The position numbers were made by a program, and so were the translations under genes. This document shows positions 40,750 to 51,573 of a stretch of DNA of 64,000 bases, one piece after another (positions within the stretch are counted from its first letter, which is position 1; each line of letters opens with the position of its first letter). Under the pieces are notes generated by a model, which was given only the letters and a program-made list of their open reading frames with translations, was not told where the DNA came from and did no database searches. This stretch comes from Perkinsus chesapeaki ATCC PRA-425 (lineage: Eukaryota > Protista > Perkinsozoa): NCBI GenBank assembly GCA_013115145.1, contig JAAPAO010000003.1, positions 62,001 through 126,000 on the forward strand, read 5' to 3'.

Positions 40750-43302
40750 ATGCATCCTAGTCATATGAATGAAGTCATAGATCTCGATCCGGCCACACCC
40801 TCCGCTGCCGCCAAGCCTCGCTTCTCTCTCCCGCATGCCTCACCACCAGTTCCTGCGGGCTCCATTGAAAGTAGGTTTACCCTTCGAGACCGCCCAAGGC
40901 ATCTTGCTCAATCTGACAGGTTTCTTCTATGATGATCAAGGTGTACCTTCCGATACTATGCCACAGTGTATTATTGATGAGCCTCCAACCAAGAGAAGAA
41001 CGGTGCCAGCCTGGATGCGAGGGGAGCGCGAGGCCAATCCGCCGGCGTGGAAGAAACAAAGGGTGGGTTCCCGACGGCCAGTAGCTGTCTGAGATGCTCT
41101 ATGGTGCAGGGTCAAGGAGTATTCGAAGATGAAGGGGAACTGTCCGATCAGCAACGATATGTATTTGACTTGATTGTGAAACAGAAAAAGAGTATATTCT
41201 TCACGGGTGAGGCGAATGGGCGATTTTCCGGCTATTACGCAGTCTGGCTTGGACAGGAAGCGCCGGTACTGGTAAGACCAGGACGTTGAGAGAGGTCATC
41301 AAAGCTCTGCCGCAGAAGTCCACTTTTATAACGGGTGAACTCAGGCGAAATGCGAACGTTTTGTAACGTCTATTGTCCAGCTCTTACCGGTATAGCGTCA
41401 ACTTTACTGGACAGGAGGGCCACCACACTACATAGCTTCGCTGGGATAGGTCTAGCGTACTACGACATCGACAAAAAACTCTGTTACCTGTTGTTCTGTA
41501 TTAGGCGGGGGACCAAGCAGGATTTAGTGCGGTTCGTGAGGAAGAACAACAAGGCCGTTCAGAACTGGCAGGATTGCCAAGTCCTTATCATCGATGAGGT
41601 GTCGATGATGAGCGCTGATCTCTTCAACAAGCTCGACTACGTGGCGAAGGAAATGCGCGGCAATCGGGCTAGGCCATTTGGAGGCATACAACTCGTTCTG
41701 GTCGGCGACTTTTACCAAGTGAGCCGCTTGGCTGTTAAGTGTTTTATGTCACCTGCTCGCCAGTTGCCTCCAGTAGCCAAAAGCCGACAAAGTGAAGTAA
41801 ACGCAGACGAGGGTTTGAAATGTTACGAGTCGCCCGAGTGGGACAGAGCTATTGAGGTCAACGTCCGGCTCACGCAGGTGTAGGGCATCGGCGAGGACGC
41901 AGTAAGGTGACTCTGAGTATTTGAATAGTTATCGAACGAAGGACAAAGCTTTGAAGGATATGCTAGATGAGATCAGAGATAACAACCTGTCCCAGCGATC
42001 GATGAACTTACTTAGAAGGCTACAGAGGGACATTGTTACTCCGAATGGGGTGAGTGGTTCCGTTACGATCGGCTTGTCTCTTCATGCCCGTGCGTAGGTG
42101 CGACCAACAATTCTATATCCTACCAATGAGCAAGTTGACCGAAAGAACGCGGAGGAGATGAGTAGACTTCAAGGGGATAGCCAGACGTAGGCTTATCACA
42201 CTCGCCTGAGTATCTCCTGGTTTGGCCCTCATGCGTGTGCTTTCTCAGGTATGACGCAGAGGACTCGGGCCATCCCGATGACTTGCAGTATATCGATCGC
42301 TACACGCTATTTCCTCGAAGGCTCACCCTTAAGATTGGCGCTCAAGTGAGGAACTCAGACGTCACTGGGTCGTGGCATTAAAAGGCAGGTTATGTTGCTG
42401 AAGAACCAAAGTGGCGAGTTGGGGACTCGTCTGGTGAATGGGTCCCAGGGCAAAGTCGTGGGCTTCGTCCCGGCCTCTGGAGGCGTGTCTCCTAAAGGTG
42501 AGTCGTAGTCTGTATCATTCCGGATTACCTGTGGTACTGGCTGCTATTCAAGTTCGTTAGTAGCCTCGGATTGGTTGCTCCTCAGACGATCCGACCGGCG
42601 GCGGTTGGTCCGAGACAGCAGGGCCAATGTTGCCCAGGGTAGGCGATGCTGTTGCGTTGGGAGCAGTGGCGTTTTTGTGCGGTTTTCAGGTGCAGTTCTC
42701 TCACATGGGGGGAACTGTAGAGCAAACTGTAGACTATGAGAGCTTCGAGTTGGAGACTAAGAATAGGAAAATGAAGCGGAAACAGATACCACTAAAGCTG
42801 TCCTGGGCGATGACTATTCACAAGGTGATGCCCTCTCATTCCAGCAACAACCCGCAATGGGCATCATTCGCCCATCGGCGGTTTCCGAAGAAGATCCGAT
42901 GCTACGTTGTGTTAGGCCCAAGGTATGTCGATTGATTGTGTACAAGTCGACATTAGCCGAGTATTCGCAGAAGGTCAAGCGTAAGTAGAGATCCCCGAGA
43001 TTCCCACGGCGGCGTCCTACAAGTTGCACCCCAGTTACGTGGCTCTGAGCCGTGCTCGTTCGATAGAAGGCTTGCAAGTGCTGAGCTTTGACCCCCGCCG
43101 CTTCGGTTGCTCTCCTGAAGTCGTCGAATTCTACAAGAAGCACGTGAAAGATGCTCCTTTGGTGTATAACAGCTGCAACGCCACAACATCGATTGCCGAA
43201 ACCGTCACTAGTGGCGGCGGTGGTACTGCTGCTGCTGCGAATTCTTTGGTACCGAGCAAGTGGAATAATAAGAAGAGGGATCTCAAGAAGCGAGGAATTT
43301 GA
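40750..43302 (+). CDS. PIF1: ATP-dependent DNA helicase PIF1 (host copy), multi-exon
   Basis: SIFFTG..GTGK, LHSFAGIG, VLIIDEVSMM, PFGGIQLVLVGDFYQLPPV, KIGAQVMLLKN, RKQIPLKLSWAMTIHK and YVALSRARS. Confidence 0.95.
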
Positions 43303-43650: not shown

Positions 43651-46600
43651 ATGGGCAAACGCCACTGCACCCGCCGCGCTGCTTCAACAACCGATGCAGT
43701 GCTGCTTGCTGCTGCCTTGATCATTGGAAGGAGCAAAGGAGCTCCGTGCCATGTCTTGTGGCTTCCAGATGATAGCCTGCCTTATTCTGTTACGATATTT
43801 GAGGGGATGAAGAAGTCGTTTCATGAAAAGCTGGTGAGTTCAATTGCCATTCAGGGTTTGACCGAGCTGCTGCAGTGAGTCGCAGGCTTCGCGAAATATT
43901 GTGAAGGTGGTCGGGGACGTTCATATATTTTCAGTTCCCACGTGGACCGACCAAGATGGAGCGCGAAAGGAGCGAGGAATTCGTGAAGGCATGCCCTGCA
44001 TACGATTTCGCCATGTTGCCTCCGCCCCCAGACCAGACAGAATGGTAAACTCAGAGCAGCCTTCGGAAGCGCACAAGGAATCATCATCAGGTTCGAGTTG
44101 GGCAAACCCGAATCCTTGTACAAGGATCCGACTGACAAGAAGCTTGCTCAGTCGATCAAATACGTCATTTATCACATTTGTCAACTTAATACACTCATCC
44201 CACTGGAGAGGATCTTCCTAGCGGGTATCTACAGAGGGGGAGCTGTAGCTATGCAGACTGCGTAAGACAGGTGCATTGCCTTCCATGTGTCATTTTCTTC
44301 ATTCTCTCAGATGGTATTATCCTGGCAAACTCGGTGGGATACTATCTTTCGCTGGATGGATCCCCCTCCGTGGTGGGGCGGGTCATGCTTGGGTAGGGGT
44401 AGGGGGAAGGGATCTCACGCGAACCCCATTCTATGCCCTTCCTGATATATATCTCGAGAGAGTAGACTACTCAGTACCGGATGAAGAATGGCGAGTCACT
44501 ACTCTCGTAAGAGTTCTCAGCCCTAGCCGCGATCATTTAGTGTCTTAGGCATTGGCAGGGTGCCGACAACTGGCATACGTTTCCCAGTGGCACCGGTGTA
44601 GCATACTCGATGTTCCCAACTTTAAACGAATGATGAGCTTGCAACGAAGCAAGAGCAACACGAGCATATCGATTGCGTTCGGCCAGTTAGCCTCTGAGCT
44701 CGTACAACCTCTGTGTGCCGTAATTTGGTTCGATCCCCCGGAGCGGCCGTGGCACAGGGCGAAGCTGAAGAGATCTGTAAGTGTTCCTCAAACTTGACCA
44801 AAGGGAAAAATCGTGGCTGCGATTGCGAATATATCGCGTTCGTTGAACGTTCCCTCCTACGGTCTTGAAAAGCACCCAACTTGGATGGCAATCGTTTGCC
44901 ACCTCCAATGGAGGAATCGGCCCTCTGGTGATTAATACTCACTCGATTTATACTCGAAATAAACACCACCGCAAACTCAAGATGAAACTTGAGGGTCCCA
45001 CGGTGGAGGGAATTACTCCTCCCAACTGATATAATGGGACTCCCACCATACCAGTTGTAGCATACGCTTTGTCAGGTAGAAGCTCTTTCGCAGAAGGGAG
45101 AGTTGTCTCTTATTTGCGGCGAGAATATATTATTAGAGCATGATTTCATAAATCCAAAGGACGGAAAGGCCTTCGCTGACGGGTAAGGCAATTGCAAAGC
45201 TATGGGAGACCTGAAGGCAACCTTGGACATCATAGAGTATCGTTCATATATAGGCTGTGATTCAGATCCGACAAGGCTGAGCTTCATTATCGTTTTCTTG
45301 CGACCTACAGACGTCTGCAAGAACTGAACATACCGCCCCACCGTATTGTACTTGTTGGCAAGGGCGTCGGTGCCACATTAGTGGGGCACATGGCGTAAGA
45401 ACAACAGCTGAGGAAAAGTTCACGCACTCACTTCTATTACAGATTGGAGAATAGAGCATCTATCAAACAGCTGGCTGGTGTTATCCAGGTCAACCCCTCC
45501 GATGTAACTGGGGACCTTGCCTGGTAGTAGCCATTTCAGTTCTCAGGTTCCATCTGCTACAGAACCCGACCGCACCGCTTCCGCTATACCAATGAGGCAA
45601 ATCAAGCAAAGGACGGATTCTGGGTACGACGTTGATGTCACAGCAACGTCGTGACGATGTCGTCGTCGCTCGTTGGCATCCGTCTCCACCGGTTCAGGGT
45701 TGAAGAGGAGGTGCTCGAGCATATGGCTAATCTTCTTTCGAGAGCCCCTCGACGATGTACTGTAGTCCTCTTGGTAAACGATATTCCAGAGCTGATCTCT
45801 TTCGGGTCTTGGAGCCAAGCGGTAAGCCTTAGTTGCTTTCGGACAATATACCTATAAACATTAGCTGGTGTACGCGCTATGACTTAGGTTGAAGCGGGCG
45901 CGAAGAGCCACAGGCTCAATGATAAGTGCAATGATGAAGTTAAGTTCGTTACTATTGTAGAGTCTCTCCTTTGGTAAGTGCTAGCTTGTGCCACAAGCTA
46001 GCGGGCACCCCAGTGCAAGTGCACTTGTGTGTCTCTCTGGCCTTCCTACATTCTTCTCCAGGGTGGACCTGTCCTCTCGCAAATCTGATGTCCTTTCCCA
46101 TGTGTTCCGACTTGCTGATGAGAACCGTCTAATAGTTTTGCTTCCCTACTCCCTGGGAAAGATATACGGGTGAGACCAGCAGTCCCTCTACGCTCGACAG
46201 GCAGCATGTCCATCAGATCTCATCTGTCGGGGAATAATATAGTGAATATAGGCTTTCCTGATATAATAACAACGAAAGCCGATAAAGGGCGTCAAGAAGC
46301 TCAGGTACCTTCTGCGCGTTGGAGTTCTTCTCGCCGACGATTCGAGATTCTCCAGTTCTGCTTCGTTGATGCGTTTATTTCAGGATACATTAACCCATTG
46401 CATTATTCCGTTCGCTCTGAGTTGGGCGTGGAATACCGCGTCTAAAGTAACAAGACCTATATCGAAATGCAGCAGCAGCGGCTGGGAGCTGCTATAAGGT
46501 GTGGTTAGTCGTTTTTACGAGAGTACCACTGAGAATATTAACTGAAGTGTCTTCCTCCTATGCCCATGCCCCCTACATGTTGCAAATGTTGCTTTAGTGA

Positions 46601-48991
46601 TGTTAACCACAGGTGCCAGTTCGTTGTGTTTGGTAAAATCTGTGACACTCGTTATGGTATGTAGGGCGGACCTATACCGTCTCAATCGTTGCTCTCTCTC
46701 ACGTTTAGCTTTCAATGTTTGGGTCTACAAAAGGGTGCATAGCGATCTCGAGCATGACGCTCGGCTTCAGCCGGTTTGGAGCGTCTGCTTGCAAGGTCTT
46801 CTGGTTGTATGAAGCCAGCGATCGCGATGCGGCCAAGGAACACTTCGGTGCTTCCAAGGAGGCATTTGATGTATGCTATAGCAGCATACAATAGGCAATT
46901 AGATTTGTTACTTCCAGGAGGTTGTGAGAACAGCAAGTGCTGCCGGTGAGCTCGAACGGAATTGCGGCAGGGCGAAGTTCTCCATGCTGTTCCCTCCCGA
47001 AGGCCAAGCTGACTGGTACGCCTCGGGTCTTCTATGATATACAGAAAGTTGCGATAGGTTCGACTCCTCCGCATCTTCGGTGCTTGTGGACCCACTATTT
47101 AGCACCTCGCTCAACTTCTTGAGCGGTATTGTCAACACGGTTGCCGCGCACAGCCCTACCGAGTCAGTGTTCCTGGTCGGCTATGGGTCCTCCGCTGCCA
47201 TGGCGGCCCACTTCGCGTGAGCATTAGGCTTTCGACGGCCCCTTCTGTATCACCACCTGTGCGCTTTCAGAAGTCTGTATCCTCTGAGACTTGGTGGCAT
47301 TATGGCGGATAATCCACAACCACCTATTGAGAAATCCAGTATGTCAGCTAAGGTGACAAACAGCAGGTTGGGGTCCCCTGTGCGGATTTACTCACGGACT
47401 GGAAAGCGGCAAGCAAGAAGGGTGAGTGATGTTGCAGCTTGTCCAAGTCTATGATAGCTATACTGACATAAACTATCAGGCCGGGGAAGCTATGGTTGAT
47501 ATTCAGGAAGGTGTTGATCTCTTAACCGACCTGCTGCTCCTCATGATCCGTCCTCTCTGCGCTGTTATTTGGGTGCTGCCAGACACGCATGAAGCAAGCG
47601 AAGTTCCGCTGGGAACTTCCACTGTGAGATTATCAGAGGCTGCGGGCCATATAACTGGCCTTCGGGAAGGCCAGCAGGACGACCTTATCGATACCAGCAA
47701 GTTCAGCCAGCACTGTGGCCAAGGTGTCGCCTATAGGAATGTCCAATTCCCGGCGTTGGCCTTGGAACAGATGGAGTACTTCAAAGGGCTTCTGTCTCCT
47801 CATCCACCTGCTAATGGCCGTCTCAGAAACGGAAAAGTCCCTGAGAGCACCTGTGAGCTGTGGTACGAGCTGATCATCCATTTATCCGAACATCGAGTAC
47901 TTCCACAGCATATCGTCCTTGGTGGCAGCCATGGAGCGGCAAACGCCATAGAGCAGTGCATGTGGGCCGAGGAGCTCATCCGGATGATACAGCTCTGTCA
48001 ACGTAGATACACCACTATCCATCAGCTCGGAAGTTTGGGAGGTATAATCAAATTGGCGGACGAGAATGCCGAGGTGAAGAGTGGAAAGTTGGGGGCGGCG
48101 GCGGCGGAGGATATCCTATCGTTTGTTAGTACGCCACCACAGCAAGGCTTCATCGTCGCCAAGAACTGCCCACGGAAACCATAGAGGTCACTATCTGGTC
48201 TCGGACTGAAGTGTCGCCACCATCACCAGCGCGAGCCATATTCGTTCATATGGATTGCTGTGCCTTCAGATGCATCTCAAAAGTCAGGAATTGCGCGAGA
48301 AACTAGCAGCAACTTTTGTGAAGTTCCTTACTGCCCCTCCGAGGCAATGCTCAGCTATCTTGCTCGTAAAAGACGCCTTCGAGGCCCACATGTTGGACTC
48401 TTGGGGGGATCAGGTGAGGCCGCGAGTGTTGATCGGACTATGTTTCAATGCCATCAGGCCAAGGAAATAGCAAAGAGAAAGAGCCTGGTGTTAAATCCGA
48501 TGTGCAACGGACGAGTGGAGTTTGTGACGATCATCTTGCCTTTAGTGGAGTAAGAGTATCACTTTTTCGTATATGGCCACTGGAACTCTTAAAGTTGTCG
48601 AGTGGCCATATACTTATTCTCACATCCAACCCGCCCTGCCCCAGGACAATTGGCGTACTTCGCCGGTTAATCGAAGTCCACTCTCCACCAGACTCAACAT
48701 TCATATTCATTCGTAGCTCGGAAGAAGATACTTCTGTCAAGCAACGGTGAGCGCTCTCCACTCTTTCAGCGCTGGCCTCATCCGCGCCTCAGGTTTGCGC
48801 TACGTTCTCAAGGGTATCACGTCATACCGCTCGCTGCAATGCCACCCGACGGCGACTTAGCTCCAGCTGTGAGAATGAACTTGCTCTCTTTTGCCATTCT
48901 TTTTCCTCAGATACGCGCTCATTTGGAACTGGTAGCCAACTCTGCCGCGGCTGCCCTCTGGACTCGGCTGGTCCGTGCGCTAGGCAAATGA
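43651..48991 (+). CDS. Predicted secreted protein with ~6 tandem degenerate phospholipase/carboxylesterase (APT1-like alpha/beta-hydrolase) domains
   Basis: Signal-like AVLLAAALIIGRSKG. Elbow-like motifs RIFLAGIYRGG (44208), RIVLVGKGVGA (45342), NVALVMLTTGA (~46585), SVFLVGYGSSA (47164), HIVLGGSHGAA (47909) and TFIFIRSSEE (~48697). Five of the six are followed by a LGGI/LAGV/KGCI-type strand. Repeated starts PCHVLWLP, PLCAVIWFDP, PLCAVIWVLP and QCSAILLV. Confidence 0.7.
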
Positions 48992-49557: not shown

Positions 49558-51573
49558 ATGCAGCCCAGTCTCCCTCTCCAGCAGCAGCTCCTCCCTAGAA
49601 CCGAGTCCCACAAGCACGCCCATCCTCGGTGGCCATGGGTCTTGGTCACGTGCTTAGCTTTCTTGTGCTCCTTTGGGAGCGTGTGGATATATTTCTCGCA
49701 CCGCGGAGGTGAGATACTACTCTTTTTCTCCTGTGCACTGTGTAACAGACGGACTCCATTTTCCATTAGCTCTCTAATTCCGCGTGCGCAGGTAGAAGCA
49801 CTGTGGAAGGCGAATTCAAGATGGGCGGTTCCGTCAATCTCCTGTCTGAGGAATTCTGGACCCGTCTGGAGTATGGTGGCAACCATCTTCTTATCAAGGA
49901 GCCCAATATCTGCGACCCCACTGTCAAGCAGTACAGCGGCTACTTCACAGTCAATGCAACAAACGACAGAAAGTAAGAGCGTGCCTCTCTTCCTGGGTGC
50001 TGACGCTCAATAGGTATTTCTTCTGGTTTTTCGAGGCGAGGAATTCGCCGTCAACATCACCCACAACACTCTGGTTGAGCGGTGGTCCAGGAGCAAGTTC
50101 TATTCTGGGCTTGTTAATGGAGAATGGTCCATGCGGCGTTCTCGATGATGGTGTGACCACCCAGTTCAATGATGATGGATGGAACCATGCCTCTAACATG
50201 GTCTGGCTCGATCAGCCTGCTGGCACAGGCTACTCTATGGGCAAGCATGAACACAGTCTGGCTGAAGTGAGGGATGACCTCTACAGCTTCATACAGGCAT
50301 TTTTCCACCACTTTCCCCAATACAATAGAGACTTCCATATTACCGGAGAGTCATTCGCTGGGCACTACATACCAGCGATTGCGGACAAGATAGTGAAGGA
50401 AAATGAGAACATTCGTCAGAGTAAGTCCCATCACCAAATGAGGTGCAGTCGTCCGTGAGACTGCCACTAAGCGAACGTGCTCAGGAAACGAATCAACACT
50501 GCATACGTTTGTTGATTTGCGCGGTATGGCCATCGGGAACGGGGACACGGACACGCCACATTCAGCGCAATATATGGCCCAGATGGTGAGTTGTGCGACA
50601 TTTATCTGTAAAAGAGCTTCGCAGGATGCTGGTTGGTTCTTAGGCGTTTGCCGCTGGGGTTGTGAATCGCACTGTTTTTGATAAGATGATCGCATCCGTA
50701 CCATCTACAACCGAACTCATGCTGCGTTGTGCTGAAATCCTCGACAAAGTAGTGCTGAACTCGAGCACTCTAATGGCGGTATTCGTTCCGTCAGCTGAAG
50801 GAACCAGTTGACTTATCCGCTATACCGCAGGCTTGCTGGGACGCTAATATGGCGTACATGGTCAATATAATGCTACCTGTGCAGTCAACTGGGAGAAACA
50901 TGTACCAATTGGCATCATATTTCCTGCGATATGTGGCTCGATTCAGATACGATCTCCGACTGAATGGTACCTACAACCTGAGCCGCTACACTTCGTTTTT
51001 GAACACCCCAGAAATCATGAAGGCTCTCGGGGCTTTGAAGAATTGGACCACGATAAATGTGGGAGTAAGAAATATCACATATTTTCAACTGTACACTTGG
51101 GAAGTATTTCTCATTTTCTTCCATCTTTATTTTCACAACATCACATCCGCCCGATCGCTTCAATCAGGTAACTCTCGACTTGTACTTCGATGATGCTTAT
51201 CGTATTTATAACCCCGAGGTTGAGCGTGTTCTGGATTCTGGAATCAAAGTGCTTATATATGCGGGAGATCAAGATTACATTTGTAACTGGCTCGTTGGTG
51301 ATGCCTGGACGAAAAGACTACAGTGGCGTGGAGCCAATGATTTCGCTCGTGAAGATCTTCAGCCGTATACCATACGTAAGATCTTATCCCTTCGGCAAGC
51401 ATGGAGTGCAAATCTGTTCAGATAATGATGCAATCGGTGAGATCCGTCGTAAAAACAATTTGGCGTTCATTCGCGTATACAACGCTGGGCATATGGTACC
51501 TCATGATCAACCGAGGGCAAGCCTACTTATGATTGAGAATTTCTTGTCTGGTGATATGTTTGCCTCGTCTTAA
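49558..51573 (+). CDS. Serine carboxypeptidase (peptidase S10, CPY-like) with N-terminal TM/signal anchor
   Basis: KQYSGYF, YFFWFFEAR, LWLSGGPGASS, DQPAGTGYS, GESFAGHYIP, AIGNG, LIYAGDQDYICNW and NAGHMVPHDQP. Confidence 0.95.

What the first reader, a model, noticed from the sequence alone, without database searches (positions are those of the whole stretch)
43651..48991. Secreted hexa-repeat pseudo-hydrolase: six fused APT1-like domains, most lacking the catalytic serine
Seen: six nucleophile-elbow-like motifs where APT1/carboxylesterases have RIILGGFSQGG: RIFLAGIYRGG, RIVLVGKGVGA, NVALVMLTTGA, SVFLVGYGSSA, HIVLGGSHGAA and TFIFIRSSEE. Most are preceded by the expected amphipathic helix and followed by a LGGI/LAGV-type strand. 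Three domain junctions read through without a stop (…GQLASELVQPLCAVIW; …LTDLLLLMIRPLCAVIW; …ATFVKFLTAPPRQCSAILL), implying one polypeptide of roughly 1300+ aa. A signal-peptide-like N-terminus precedes repeat 1. Only repeat 5 keeps GxSxG. Established: APT1-type enzymes are single ~230-aa cytosolic domains, while dead alpha/beta-hydrolase folds act as adhesins/receptors (neuroligin, thyroglobulin ChEL). Inference: an apparently undescribed parasite lipid-binding, adhesion or scaffold protein.
Basis: partly seen in the sequence, partly recalled or inferred. Interest (0 to 1): 0.8.

Follow-up and report, generated by a model that had tools for sequence, protein, structure and literature searches.

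The report
Two tandem dead-thioesterase genes in Perkinsus
This stretch of the oyster/clam parasite Perkinsus chesapeaki most likely holds two neighbouring sister genes, each for a probably secreted protein of two or three worn-out copies of a lipid-esterase fold without its catalytic residues; it is a genus-specific curiosity, not one giant six-domain protein.

Summary

The single ~1300-aa six-domain protein is not supported.
- Every A-B-C unit in the genus ends in a conserved tail, ...WAW...(G/D)WE-x-(L/I/V), followed by a stop. In the window the stop is TAA at 46495-46497.
- The next unit opens with its own ATG (46715), a signal-like stretch and its own first strand.
- I therefore read two tandem paralogous genes: gene 1 at 43651-46497 (593 aa) and gene 2 at 46715-48991 (535 aa).

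The family was found only in Perkinsus and is annotated "hypothetical". It shows moderate purifying selection (dN/dS 0.36). No RNA data were available.

Most likely function: non-catalytic secreted binding or scaffold proteins. Interest is moderate to low.

The parts
43651..46497 (+). Gene 1 (my model): 14 exons, 593 aa, signal-like start + A1 + B1 + C1 + conserved tail. Exons: 43651-43833, 43935-44044, 44091-44261, 44311-44506, 44549-44776, 45076-45182, 45266-45394, 45443-45503, 45547-45623, 45698-45821, 45888-45973, 46062-46169, 46217-46304, 46384-46497. The acceptors of exons 2 and 5 and exon 13 are the least certain.
   Evidence: Orthologue-guided spliced alignment. Splice-site scores from a matrix trained on the 26 P. 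olseni introns. All introns are GT-AG and there is no inner stop. Most intron positions are shared with P. olseni.
43651..43740 (+). Signal-peptide-like N-terminus of gene 1: basic start, hydrophobic core VLLAAALII, small residues before the first strand CHVLW.
   Evidence: Maximum 9-residue Kyte-Doolittle mean is 3.33. The same layout occurs in P. olseni and P. marinus relatives. No signal-peptide predictor was available.
43741..44704 (+). Domain A1: APT/carboxylesterase-like (PF02230-type) alpha/beta-hydrolase domain. Elbow RIFLAGIYRGG at 44209-44241, with Tyr where the nucleophile Ser should be.
   Evidence: The exon with the elbow hits APT2 and APT1 chains (E 0.04, elbow aligned to GFSQGG). 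The orthologous domain of P0002 passes Pfam PF02230. The family profile hits SOBER1 and APT1/2 (E 1.4e-5). Family alignment.
44705..45746 (+). Domain B1: shortened alpha/beta-hydrolase domain homologous to A. Starts PLCAVIW; elbow RIVLVGKGVGA at 45342-45374, with Gly at the nucleophile place.
45747..46301 (+). Domain C1: about 120-aa alpha/beta domain (strand-helix repeats). Starts PRRCTVVLLV. Its elbow-like strand-turn is RLIVLLPYSLG at 46126-46158. The fold family is unresolved.
   Evidence: Secondary structure in the model. No significant Pfam, profile, PDB or Atlas match. Most conserved part between two P. olseni isolates (dN/dS 0.08).
46302..46497 (+). Conserved C-terminal tail of gene 1 (...CIIPFALSWAW...SGWELL) and its stop codon TAA at 46495-46497.
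   Evidence: The same tail ending (G/D)WE-x-(L/I/V)-stop is found at all six unit ends in two P. olseni isolates. It is also the end of gene model P0012 from a third P. olseni assembly.
46498..46714 (.). Spacer of 217 nt between the two genes.
   Evidence: P. olseni has a 232-nt spacer at the same place, annotated there as part of a 373-nt intron.
46715..48991 (+). Gene 2 (my model): 12 exons, 535 aa, weak signal-like start + A2 + B2 + C2. Exons: 46715-46870, 46918-47015, 47058-47216, 47271-47421, 47480-47775, 47827-47961, 48007-48124, 48270-48413, 48458-48549, 48645-48746, 48793-48868, 48911-48991. The donor of exon 7 (48124 or 48073) is uncertain. The introns 47776-47826 and 47962-48006 are in frame and stop-free, so they could also be read through.
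   Evidence: The ATG at 46715 is the first Met after an in-frame stop. It is followed by a stretch alignable to the N-termini of P. olseni units and to the first strand CHVLW of A1. BLASTP of gene 1 against gene 2: E 3.3e-16, collinear over the whole length, 21.7% identity.
46787..47548 (+). Domain A2: APT/carboxylesterase-like domain. Elbow SVFLVGYGSSA at 47164-47196, with Gly at the nucleophile place.
47549..48335 (+). Domain B2: shortened alpha/beta-hydrolase domain. Elbow HIVLGGSHGAA at 47909-47941. The GGSHG string is conserved in P. olseni but shifted one residue relative to the B1-type GKSEG.
48336..48988 (+). Domain C2: small alpha/beta domain. Starts PPRQCSAILLV.
   Evidence: 52% identity to P. 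olseni in the first exon. Low model confidence. No significant match to any family.

Best explanation
The locus holds two tandem, anciently duplicated genes of a family found only in Perkinsus. Each encodes a protein of about 540-590 aa that enters the secretory pathway. Each protein consists of:
- a full-length acyl-protein-thioesterase/carboxylesterase-type alpha/beta-hydrolase domain (A);
- a shortened copy of the same fold (B);
- a small alpha/beta domain (C), which may be a further truncated copy.

Shown: the A and B domains are homologous to each other and to the APT/PF02230 fold. The nucleophile serine is replaced in A1 (Tyr), A2 (Gly) and B1 (Gly). No Asp or His is conserved at triad positions in either family.

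Inferred: the proteins are non-catalytic. They use the retained hydrolase scaffolds to bind a ligand (an acyl chain or lipid is the obvious candidate) or a partner protein, outside the cell or in a secretory compartment. Each domain is stabilised by one conserved cysteine pair at the starts of its first two strands.

The family grows by tandem gene duplication: two copies here, four in P. olseni, at least two in P. marinus. Automatic annotation tends to fuse the neighbouring copies.
For: Organism and synteny.

Real coding region: collinear 38.6%-identity spliced alignment scoring 1314 versus at most 189 in controls. dN/dS between two P. olseni isolates is 0.36.

Two genes:
- A conserved tail plus stop at the homologous place in 7 of 7 unit ends, and an ATG with a signal-like stretch and first strand opening each next unit in both species.
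- Single-unit gene models P0011 and P0012 in a third P. olseni assembly. P0012 ends exactly at ...GEWEIL and P0011 starts at M...CRGVAL....
- In P. olseni the fused model has to skip the first strand of A2, which lies in frame behind the internal ATG.

Dead sites.

Secretion: conserved N-terminal hydrophobic cores; conserved Cys pairs per domain.
Against: - No transcript evidence of any kind. No RNA run holds the stretch, so the stop/ATG reading rests on comparative sequence alone.
- An in-frame splice from 46446 to 46709 is possible in the window and would fuse the genes.
- The hydrophobic core at the start of gene 2 is weak (maximum 9-residue hydropathy 1.86).
- No signal-peptide predictor was run.
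- B2 keeps a conserved GGSHG, and some P. olseni B1 domains keep GxSxG in register, so residual activity is not excluded.
- Ligand binding is pure inference.
- Several exon borders are uncertain.
Confidence: 0.6

Rival explanations
1. One gene, one polypeptide of about 1100 aa with six domains (A1-B1-C1-A2-B2-C2). olseni (KAF4666908.1, KAF...FOZ60_000257). The stop at 46495 would be removed by splicing from the donor at 46447 to the acceptor at 46709.
For: A stop-free 25-exon, 1111-aa model with GT-AG introns can be built in the window. Two P. olseni annotations give fused proteins of 1099 and 1111 aa. The spacer is short at 217 nt.
Against: The sequence beyond the putative donor stays conserved as coding and ends in a stop at the homologous position in all seven unit ends examined. 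Each following unit has its own in-frame ATG plus signal-like stretch. In P. olseni the fused model must skip the first strand of A2. A third assembly annotates single-unit genes that end and start exactly at these features. The same pipelines also fuse units to the unrelated PIF1 helicase (P0005, P0006), so they over-merge here.
Confidence: 0.17
2. At least one domain is still an enzyme. B2 (GGSHG, conserved between species) or the B1 domains of P. olseni (GKSEG, GESVG) would act as a secreted esterase or lipase, with A and C as accessory domains.
For: The GxSxG strings are retained and conserved in B2 of both species despite about 29% overall identity. In-register GxSxG occurs in two P. olseni B1 types. 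The fold is that of carboxylesterases.
Against: No His and no acid is conserved downstream of the elbow in any B alignment; the invariant columns are only P, C, W, I, G, G. B lacks the segment that carries the His loop in APT1: five strands, 151 of 218 residues aligned. The window's B1 has Gly at the nucleophile place. The Ser in B2 is one residue out of register. dN/dS of B2 is 0.84, the least constrained part.
Confidence: 0.15
3. The locus is a decaying or non-functional duplicate array, and the open frames are leftovers.
For: Catalytic residues are lost. Divergence is fast (38.6% identity to P. olseni, 21.7% between the two genes). No expression data exist.
Against: 26 exons stay open with intact GT-AG borders in the window. 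Orthologues are open in P. olseni, and gene models related to domain A exist in P. marinus (P0008, P0009). Intron positions are conserved. dN/dS is 0.36 overall and 0.08 in C1. Cysteines, tail and start features are conserved.
Confidence: 0.05

Closest known systems
Acyl-protein thioesterase / lysophospholipase / carboxylesterase family (Pfam PF02230 Abhydrolase_2: human APT1 1FJ2, APT2 5SYN, LYPLAL1 3U0V, plant SOBER1 6AVV, Pseudomonas carboxylesterases 1AUO and 3CN7)
   Same: Domains A and B have this fold. A passes the Pfam threshold in the orthologue. Helix, elbow and the following LGG strand align residue by residue. The best structural matches of both A and B are in this family.
   Different: The known members are single-domain proteins of about 220-230 aa with a Ser-Asp-His triad. 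APT1 and APT2 are, from my own knowledge, cytosolic. Here two (perhaps three) copies sit in one chain behind a signal-like sequence. The nucleophile is Tyr, Gly or Glu. No His or Asp is conserved. B lacks about a quarter of the fold. Each domain carries a conserved Cys pair.
Non-catalytic alpha/beta-hydrolase-fold proteins (neuroligins, thyroglobulin ChEL domain, gliotactin; Pfam PF00135 COesterase)
   Same: The concept is shared: a hydrolase scaffold that lost its nucleophile and is used outside the cell for binding. This rests on general knowledge, not on a test here.
   Different: They belong to a different alpha/beta-hydrolase family (cholinesterase-like, about 550 aa, one domain per chain). 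No sequence or specific structural relation was found here.
Perkinsus 'hypothetical proteins' KAF4678095.1 (this locus), KAF4666908.1 and FOZ60_000257 (P. olseni), Pmar_PMAR003687 and Pmar_PMAR003688 (P. marinus)
   Same: They are the database entries for this very family. KAF4678095.1 is built from this window.
   Different: They are automatic models. KAF4678095.1 (630 aa) joins parts of both genes and stops at 48181. The P. olseni entries fuse two units, or fuse PIF1 with units. The P. marinus entries are fragments. None is characterised.

Membership tests
APT/LYPLA/carboxylesterase (Pfam PF02230 Abhydrolase_2) | Profile match above the curated threshold | tested here: met
   P. olseni orthologue P0002 scores 43.8 bits against a cut-off of 23, with stretches in A1 and A2. 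Single exons of the window are too short to pass on their own; the elbow exon gives E 0.04 to APT2. The spliced window protein could not be handed to the tool.
APT/LYPLA/carboxylesterase (Pfam PF02230 Abhydrolase_2) | Alpha/beta-hydrolase fold superposable on APT1 or carboxylesterase over the whole chain | tested here: met
APT/LYPLA/carboxylesterase (Pfam PF02230 Abhydrolase_2) | Nucleophile Ser in G-x-S-x-G at the elbow | tested here: not met
   A1 has GIYRG (Tyr), A2 has GYGSS (Gly) and B1 has GKGVG (Gly). B2 has GGSHG, but shifted by one residue relative to the family register. All A domains of three species lack Ser.
APT/LYPLA/carboxylesterase (Pfam PF02230 Abhydrolase_2) | Catalytic Asp and His in the C-terminal third | tested here: not met
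   No conserved Asp or His in the C-terminal third of the A or B family alignments. The alignment of that third to APT1 is by structure only and residue equivalences were not available, so this is a family-conservation test.
APT/LYPLA/carboxylesterase (Pfam PF02230 Abhydrolase_2) | Thioesterase or esterase activity | not testable with these tools
   Needs recombinant protein and activity probes or substrates.
Secreted protein (classical signal peptide) | N-terminal basic region, hydrophobic core and small-residue cleavage region | tested here: inconclusive
   The pattern is present and conserved in kind in seven N-termini. Core hydropathy is 3.33 for gene 1 but only 1.86 for gene 2. No SignalP-type predictor was available. 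There is no other strongly hydrophobic 19-residue window that would suggest a membrane span.
C domain as a third, truncated APT-like repeat | Significant sequence or structure similarity to A, B or PF02230 | tested here: inconclusive
   hhalign of C against A gives E 0.15 and against B gives E 0.31. Both are in the expected register but not significant. No Pfam or Atlas hit. The C part of the models was barely tested by the fold searches. One Atlas PF02230 match runs on into the first two C strands (residues 4-218). C shares the motif order Cys-strand, C-G/N-strand, helix, strand-turn with A and B, by eye.

The most novel reading that the evidence does not exclude
A family restricted to Perkinsus in which an acyl-protein-thioesterase fold was copied two or three times within one secreted chain, every copy lost catalysis, and the genes then multiplied in tandem. 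The proteins would act outside the parasite as multivalent binders of host or parasite lipids or acylated molecules, or as adhesins, in the oyster/clam infection. Their conserved C-terminal ...WE-x-L end would serve as a sorting or docking signal.
Probability: 0.3. Interest if true: 0.55.

Novelty: new variant of a known kind. Interest (0 to 1): 0.35.

Why it matters
If correct, it matters in three ways.

1. It corrects the public annotation of this locus in three Perkinsus species. Fused, truncated and helicase-merged models should become single-unit genes of about 540-600 aa.
2. It adds a rare case of an intragenic duplication of the APT/PF02230 fold, combined with loss of the catalytic serine and a secretory start. 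That makes it a candidate pseudoenzyme family in a commercially important mollusc parasite.
3. It gives a concrete, testable candidate for the poorly known secreted proteins of Perkinsus.

It does not open a long-standing question, and its function is unknown, so its weight is moderate.

Tried and rejected
- Pfam on single exons or ORF pieces of the window gave nothing useful. Megablast against plasmids gave nothing, as expected for a eukaryote.
- RNA evidence: no run holds the stretch. Two small same-species runs laid no contig.
- phmmer of the 252-aa ORF against the PDB gave nothing. The B+C profile against the PDB gave nothing meaningful. The first hhalign of A against B+C was not significant; it became significant only with cleaner, window-inclusive domain alignments.
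- ESM Atlas feature searches for B2 and C1 gave no usable hit.
- First spliced model: it produced micro-exons of 10-21 nt and a 34-nt intron. I rejected these as artefacts and rebuilt the model with splice-site scores and by hand.
- My own idea that the first strands of C complete the B fold: VIA alignments place the whole reference chain on B alone. One Atlas match and the long Foldseek alignments run on into C. This is left open.
- I first built and accepted the single 1111-aa fused model. I dropped it as the main reading after finding the conserved tail and stop and the internal ATG.
- dN/dS between the window and P. olseni was not computed, because synonymous sites are saturated at 38.6% protein identity.
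- Literature searches for the accessions and for Perkinsus secretome hydrolases found nothing on this family.
- Earlier notes of this scan contained nothing relevant.
Full report
**Where we are**

The window is from Perkinsus chesapeaki. An exhaustive HMMER search with the longest exon-like ORF (47426-48181) found only three proteins in 1.84 billion representatives:
- P0001, 89% identity, KAF4678095.1, "hypothetical protein FOL47_005374 [Perkinsus chesapeaki]";
- P0002, 1099 aa, KAF4666908.1 of P. olseni;
- an unrelated repeat protein.

The P. olseni gene lies between a PIF1 helicase gene and a serine carboxypeptidase S10 gene. The locus in the window has the same neighbours: PIF1-like ORFs up to about 43300 and an S10-like ORF from 49997.

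**Observation**

The region is split over three frames by many short introns.

I wrote a protein-to-genome spliced aligner. It reproduces the 27-exon P. olseni model exactly. Applied to the window, it gives a collinear, stop-free alignment over about 5.3 kb:
- score 1314, against 144-189 for reversed or shuffled guide proteins and 38 on the minus strand;
- 38.6% identity over 1026 residues;
- mostly 42-60-nt GT-AG introns at the same protein positions as in P. olseni.

The coding region is therefore real and conserved. Between two P. olseni isolates dN/dS is 0.36 overall. It is 0.08 in C1 and 0.84 in B2, on few substitutions.

**Internal structure**

Self-comparison shows that the region is a duplicated three-part unit, with matching pieces offset by about 2600-2970 nt.

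**One protein or two**

This is the main correction. Reading past the putative donor at 46447, the frame continues for 16 codons and stops at TAA 46495-46497 (...WAWNTASKVTRPISKCSSSGWELL-stop).

- The same tail, ending (G/D)WE-x-(L/I/V)-stop, closes all six unit ends I could inspect in two P. olseni isolates. These include the place inside P0002 that its annotators treat as an intron (EGWEIL, EGWEVL, SDWEFI, GEWETL, EGWELL, SDWEFV).
- Downstream, each next unit opens with an in-frame ATG, a signal-like hydrophobic stretch and the first strand of domain A. In the window this is ATG 46715 (MFGSTKGCIAISSMTLGFSRFGASACKVFWLY...). In P. olseni L001 it is ATG 13313 (M...FLASLLILT...VCKIICLSE...), contiguous with the annotated next exon.
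- In P. olseni the fused model has to skip that first strand.
- A third P. olseni assembly annotates single-unit genes: P0012 ends exactly at ...GEWEIL and P0011 starts M...CRGVAL....
- The same pipelines also fuse units to the PIF1 helicase (P0005, P0006), so over-merging is their habit here.

I therefore read two genes:
- gene 1 at 43651-46497 (14 exons, 593 aa);
- gene 2 at 46715-48991 (12 exons, 535 aa).

All introns are GT-AG and neither model has an inner stop. The two products are collinear paralogues (BLASTP E 3.3e-16, 21.7% identity). No further copy lies elsewhere in the window.

The spacer is 217 nt. Perkinsus mRNAs receive a spliced leader (PMC3101222), so closely packed tandem genes are plausible. 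That last step is inference.

A fused product remains possible, because the 46446-to-46709 join is in frame. No RNA data exist to decide.

**Domain A**

- Pfam PF02230 (Abhydrolase_2, the APT1/carboxylesterase family) matches A1 and A2 of the orthologue, 43.8 bits against a cut-off of 23.
- The window's own elbow exon aligns to APT2 and APT1 with GIYRGG opposite GFSQGG.
- A profile of the A domains hits SOBER1, APT2 and APT1 (best E 1.4e-5).
- The nucleophile place holds Tyr (A1 types of all three species), Gly (window A2) or Glu (P. olseni A2). No Asp or His is conserved further on.

**Domain B**

B has no Pfam or PDB sequence hit. With clean family alignments, hhalign joins B to A at E 1.9e-5 over 123 columns. 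The first strand (PLCAVIW / PCHVLW), the CG motif, the elbow and the following strand are in register.

An AlphaFold2 model of the window's own B1+C1, taken from P0001 residues 113-372, reaches mean pLDDT 72.6.
- Foldseek returns only alpha/beta hydrolases, and the nearest ESM Atlas cluster is PF02230.

B is shorter than A, with five strands plus a C-terminal helix. At the nucleophile place B1 of the window has Gly. P. olseni B1 types have Ser, Gln or Glu. B2 of both species has GGSHG, a literal GxSxG but one residue out of the family register. No His or acid is conserved in B.

**Domain C**

C consists of about 120-150 residues of alternating strands and helices. It is the most conserved part (PR-R/Q-C-x-V-x-L-x-V ... 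E ... W ... KC ...).

It has no significant similarity to A, B, Pfam, PDB or Atlas clusters. The fold searches were dominated by A and B and barely tested it.

By eye it repeats the order Cys-strand, C-G/N-strand, helix, strand-turn seen in A and B. The two insignificant hhalign hits fall in that register. A truncated third repeat is therefore possible but unproven.

**Secretion**

Gene 1 starts with a basic stretch, a strong hydrophobic core (VLLAAALII, mean hydropathy 3.33) and small residues directly before the first strand. P. olseni and P. marinus relatives have the same layout. The core of gene 2 is weak at 1.86.

Each domain keeps one Cys at the start of its first strand and one just before its second strand. 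A further pair sits in the tail. That is compatible with disulfides in a secreted protein, but no distances could be measured. No predictor was available, so secretion is likely rather than shown.

**Mechanism**

I commit, at about 0.6, to the following. The two genes encode secretory-pathway proteins whose hydrolase folds are catalytically dead and serve as binding or scaffold modules. The step from "dead fold" to "binds a lipid or partner" is inference from what other non-catalytic alpha/beta-hydrolase proteins do.

Residual esterase activity of B2 or of some P. olseni B1 domains is the main functional rival (about 0.15). A fused six-domain product is the main structural rival (about 0.17).

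**Comparison and novelty**

The closest known family is APT/LYPLA/carboxylesterase (PF02230). Fold and profile membership are met for A, and by fold and profile-profile comparison for B. The defining catalytic features are not met, so these are derived, non-enzymatic relatives rather than thioesterases.

I found no homologue outside Perkinsus in the searches that could see them, and no paper on these proteins. I rate it a new variant of a known kind: intragenic duplication of the APT fold, loss of catalysis, a secretory start, and tandem gene expansion.

Interest is moderate to low (0.35). The striking claim, six fused domains in one giant protein, is most likely an artefact of reading across two genes. 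What remains is a lineage-specific pseudoenzyme family without functional data.

**Limits**

There is no RNA evidence. Several exon borders are uncertain. The structure models rest on 12-row alignments. The spliced window proteins could not be submitted to Pfam, PDB or structure tools because they have no reference, so orthologue proteins, P0001 and single exons stood in for them.

Noticed in passing
window 43956-48181 (KAF4678095.1 = P0001): The public gene model for this locus (630 aa) is chimeric. It starts inside A1, skips the end of the A1 elbow exon and most of A2, joins gene 1 to gene 2 across about 600 nt, and ends at the stop of the 252-aa ORF (48182-48184), so it lacks C2.
   Followed up: yes
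L001 1-7890 and L002 1-3124 (P. olseni P0005, P0006): The P. olseni models of the upstream PIF1 helicase are merged with one or two further A-B-C units. P. olseni thus has four tandem units between PIF1 and the S10 peptidase, against two in the window.
   Followed up: partly
window 47776-47826 and 47962-48006: Two candidate introns of 51 and 45 nt lie inside the uninterrupted 252-aa ORF. They are in frame and stop-free, have GT-AG ends, and sit exactly where P. olseni has 41- and 45-nt introns. ORF scanning reads straight through them.
   Followed up: partly
window 46480-46497; L001 4280, 8217, 13078; L002 4221, 8119, 13084: The C-terminus (G/D)-W-E-x-(L/I/V) directly before the stop is conserved in first-type units across paralogues and species. 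It does not fit K/HDEL. A role as a sorting or docking signal is a guess. Second-type units (window gene 2, ending ...VRALGK) lack it.
   Followed up: no
P. olseni P0002 versus P0004 (L001/L002): Selective constraint is uneven along the protein. dN/dS is 0.08 in C1, 0.18 in B1, 0.28-0.40 in A1, A2 and C2, and 0.84 in B2. B2 is the only domain that keeps a GxSxG string in the window, yet it is the least constrained. Substitution counts are small.
   Followed up: partly
window 44777-45075: One long intron (299 nt) inside B1 stands out among 42-100-nt introns. It is matched by a 313-nt intron at the same protein position in P. olseni. I did not look for anything embedded in it.
   Followed up: no
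window about 41335-43300 and 49997-51200: The flanking genes are a PIF1-type helicase C-terminal part upstream and a serine carboxypeptidase (S10; WLSGGPG and GESFAGHYIP motifs) downstream. The order is the same as in P. olseni.
   Followed up: partly
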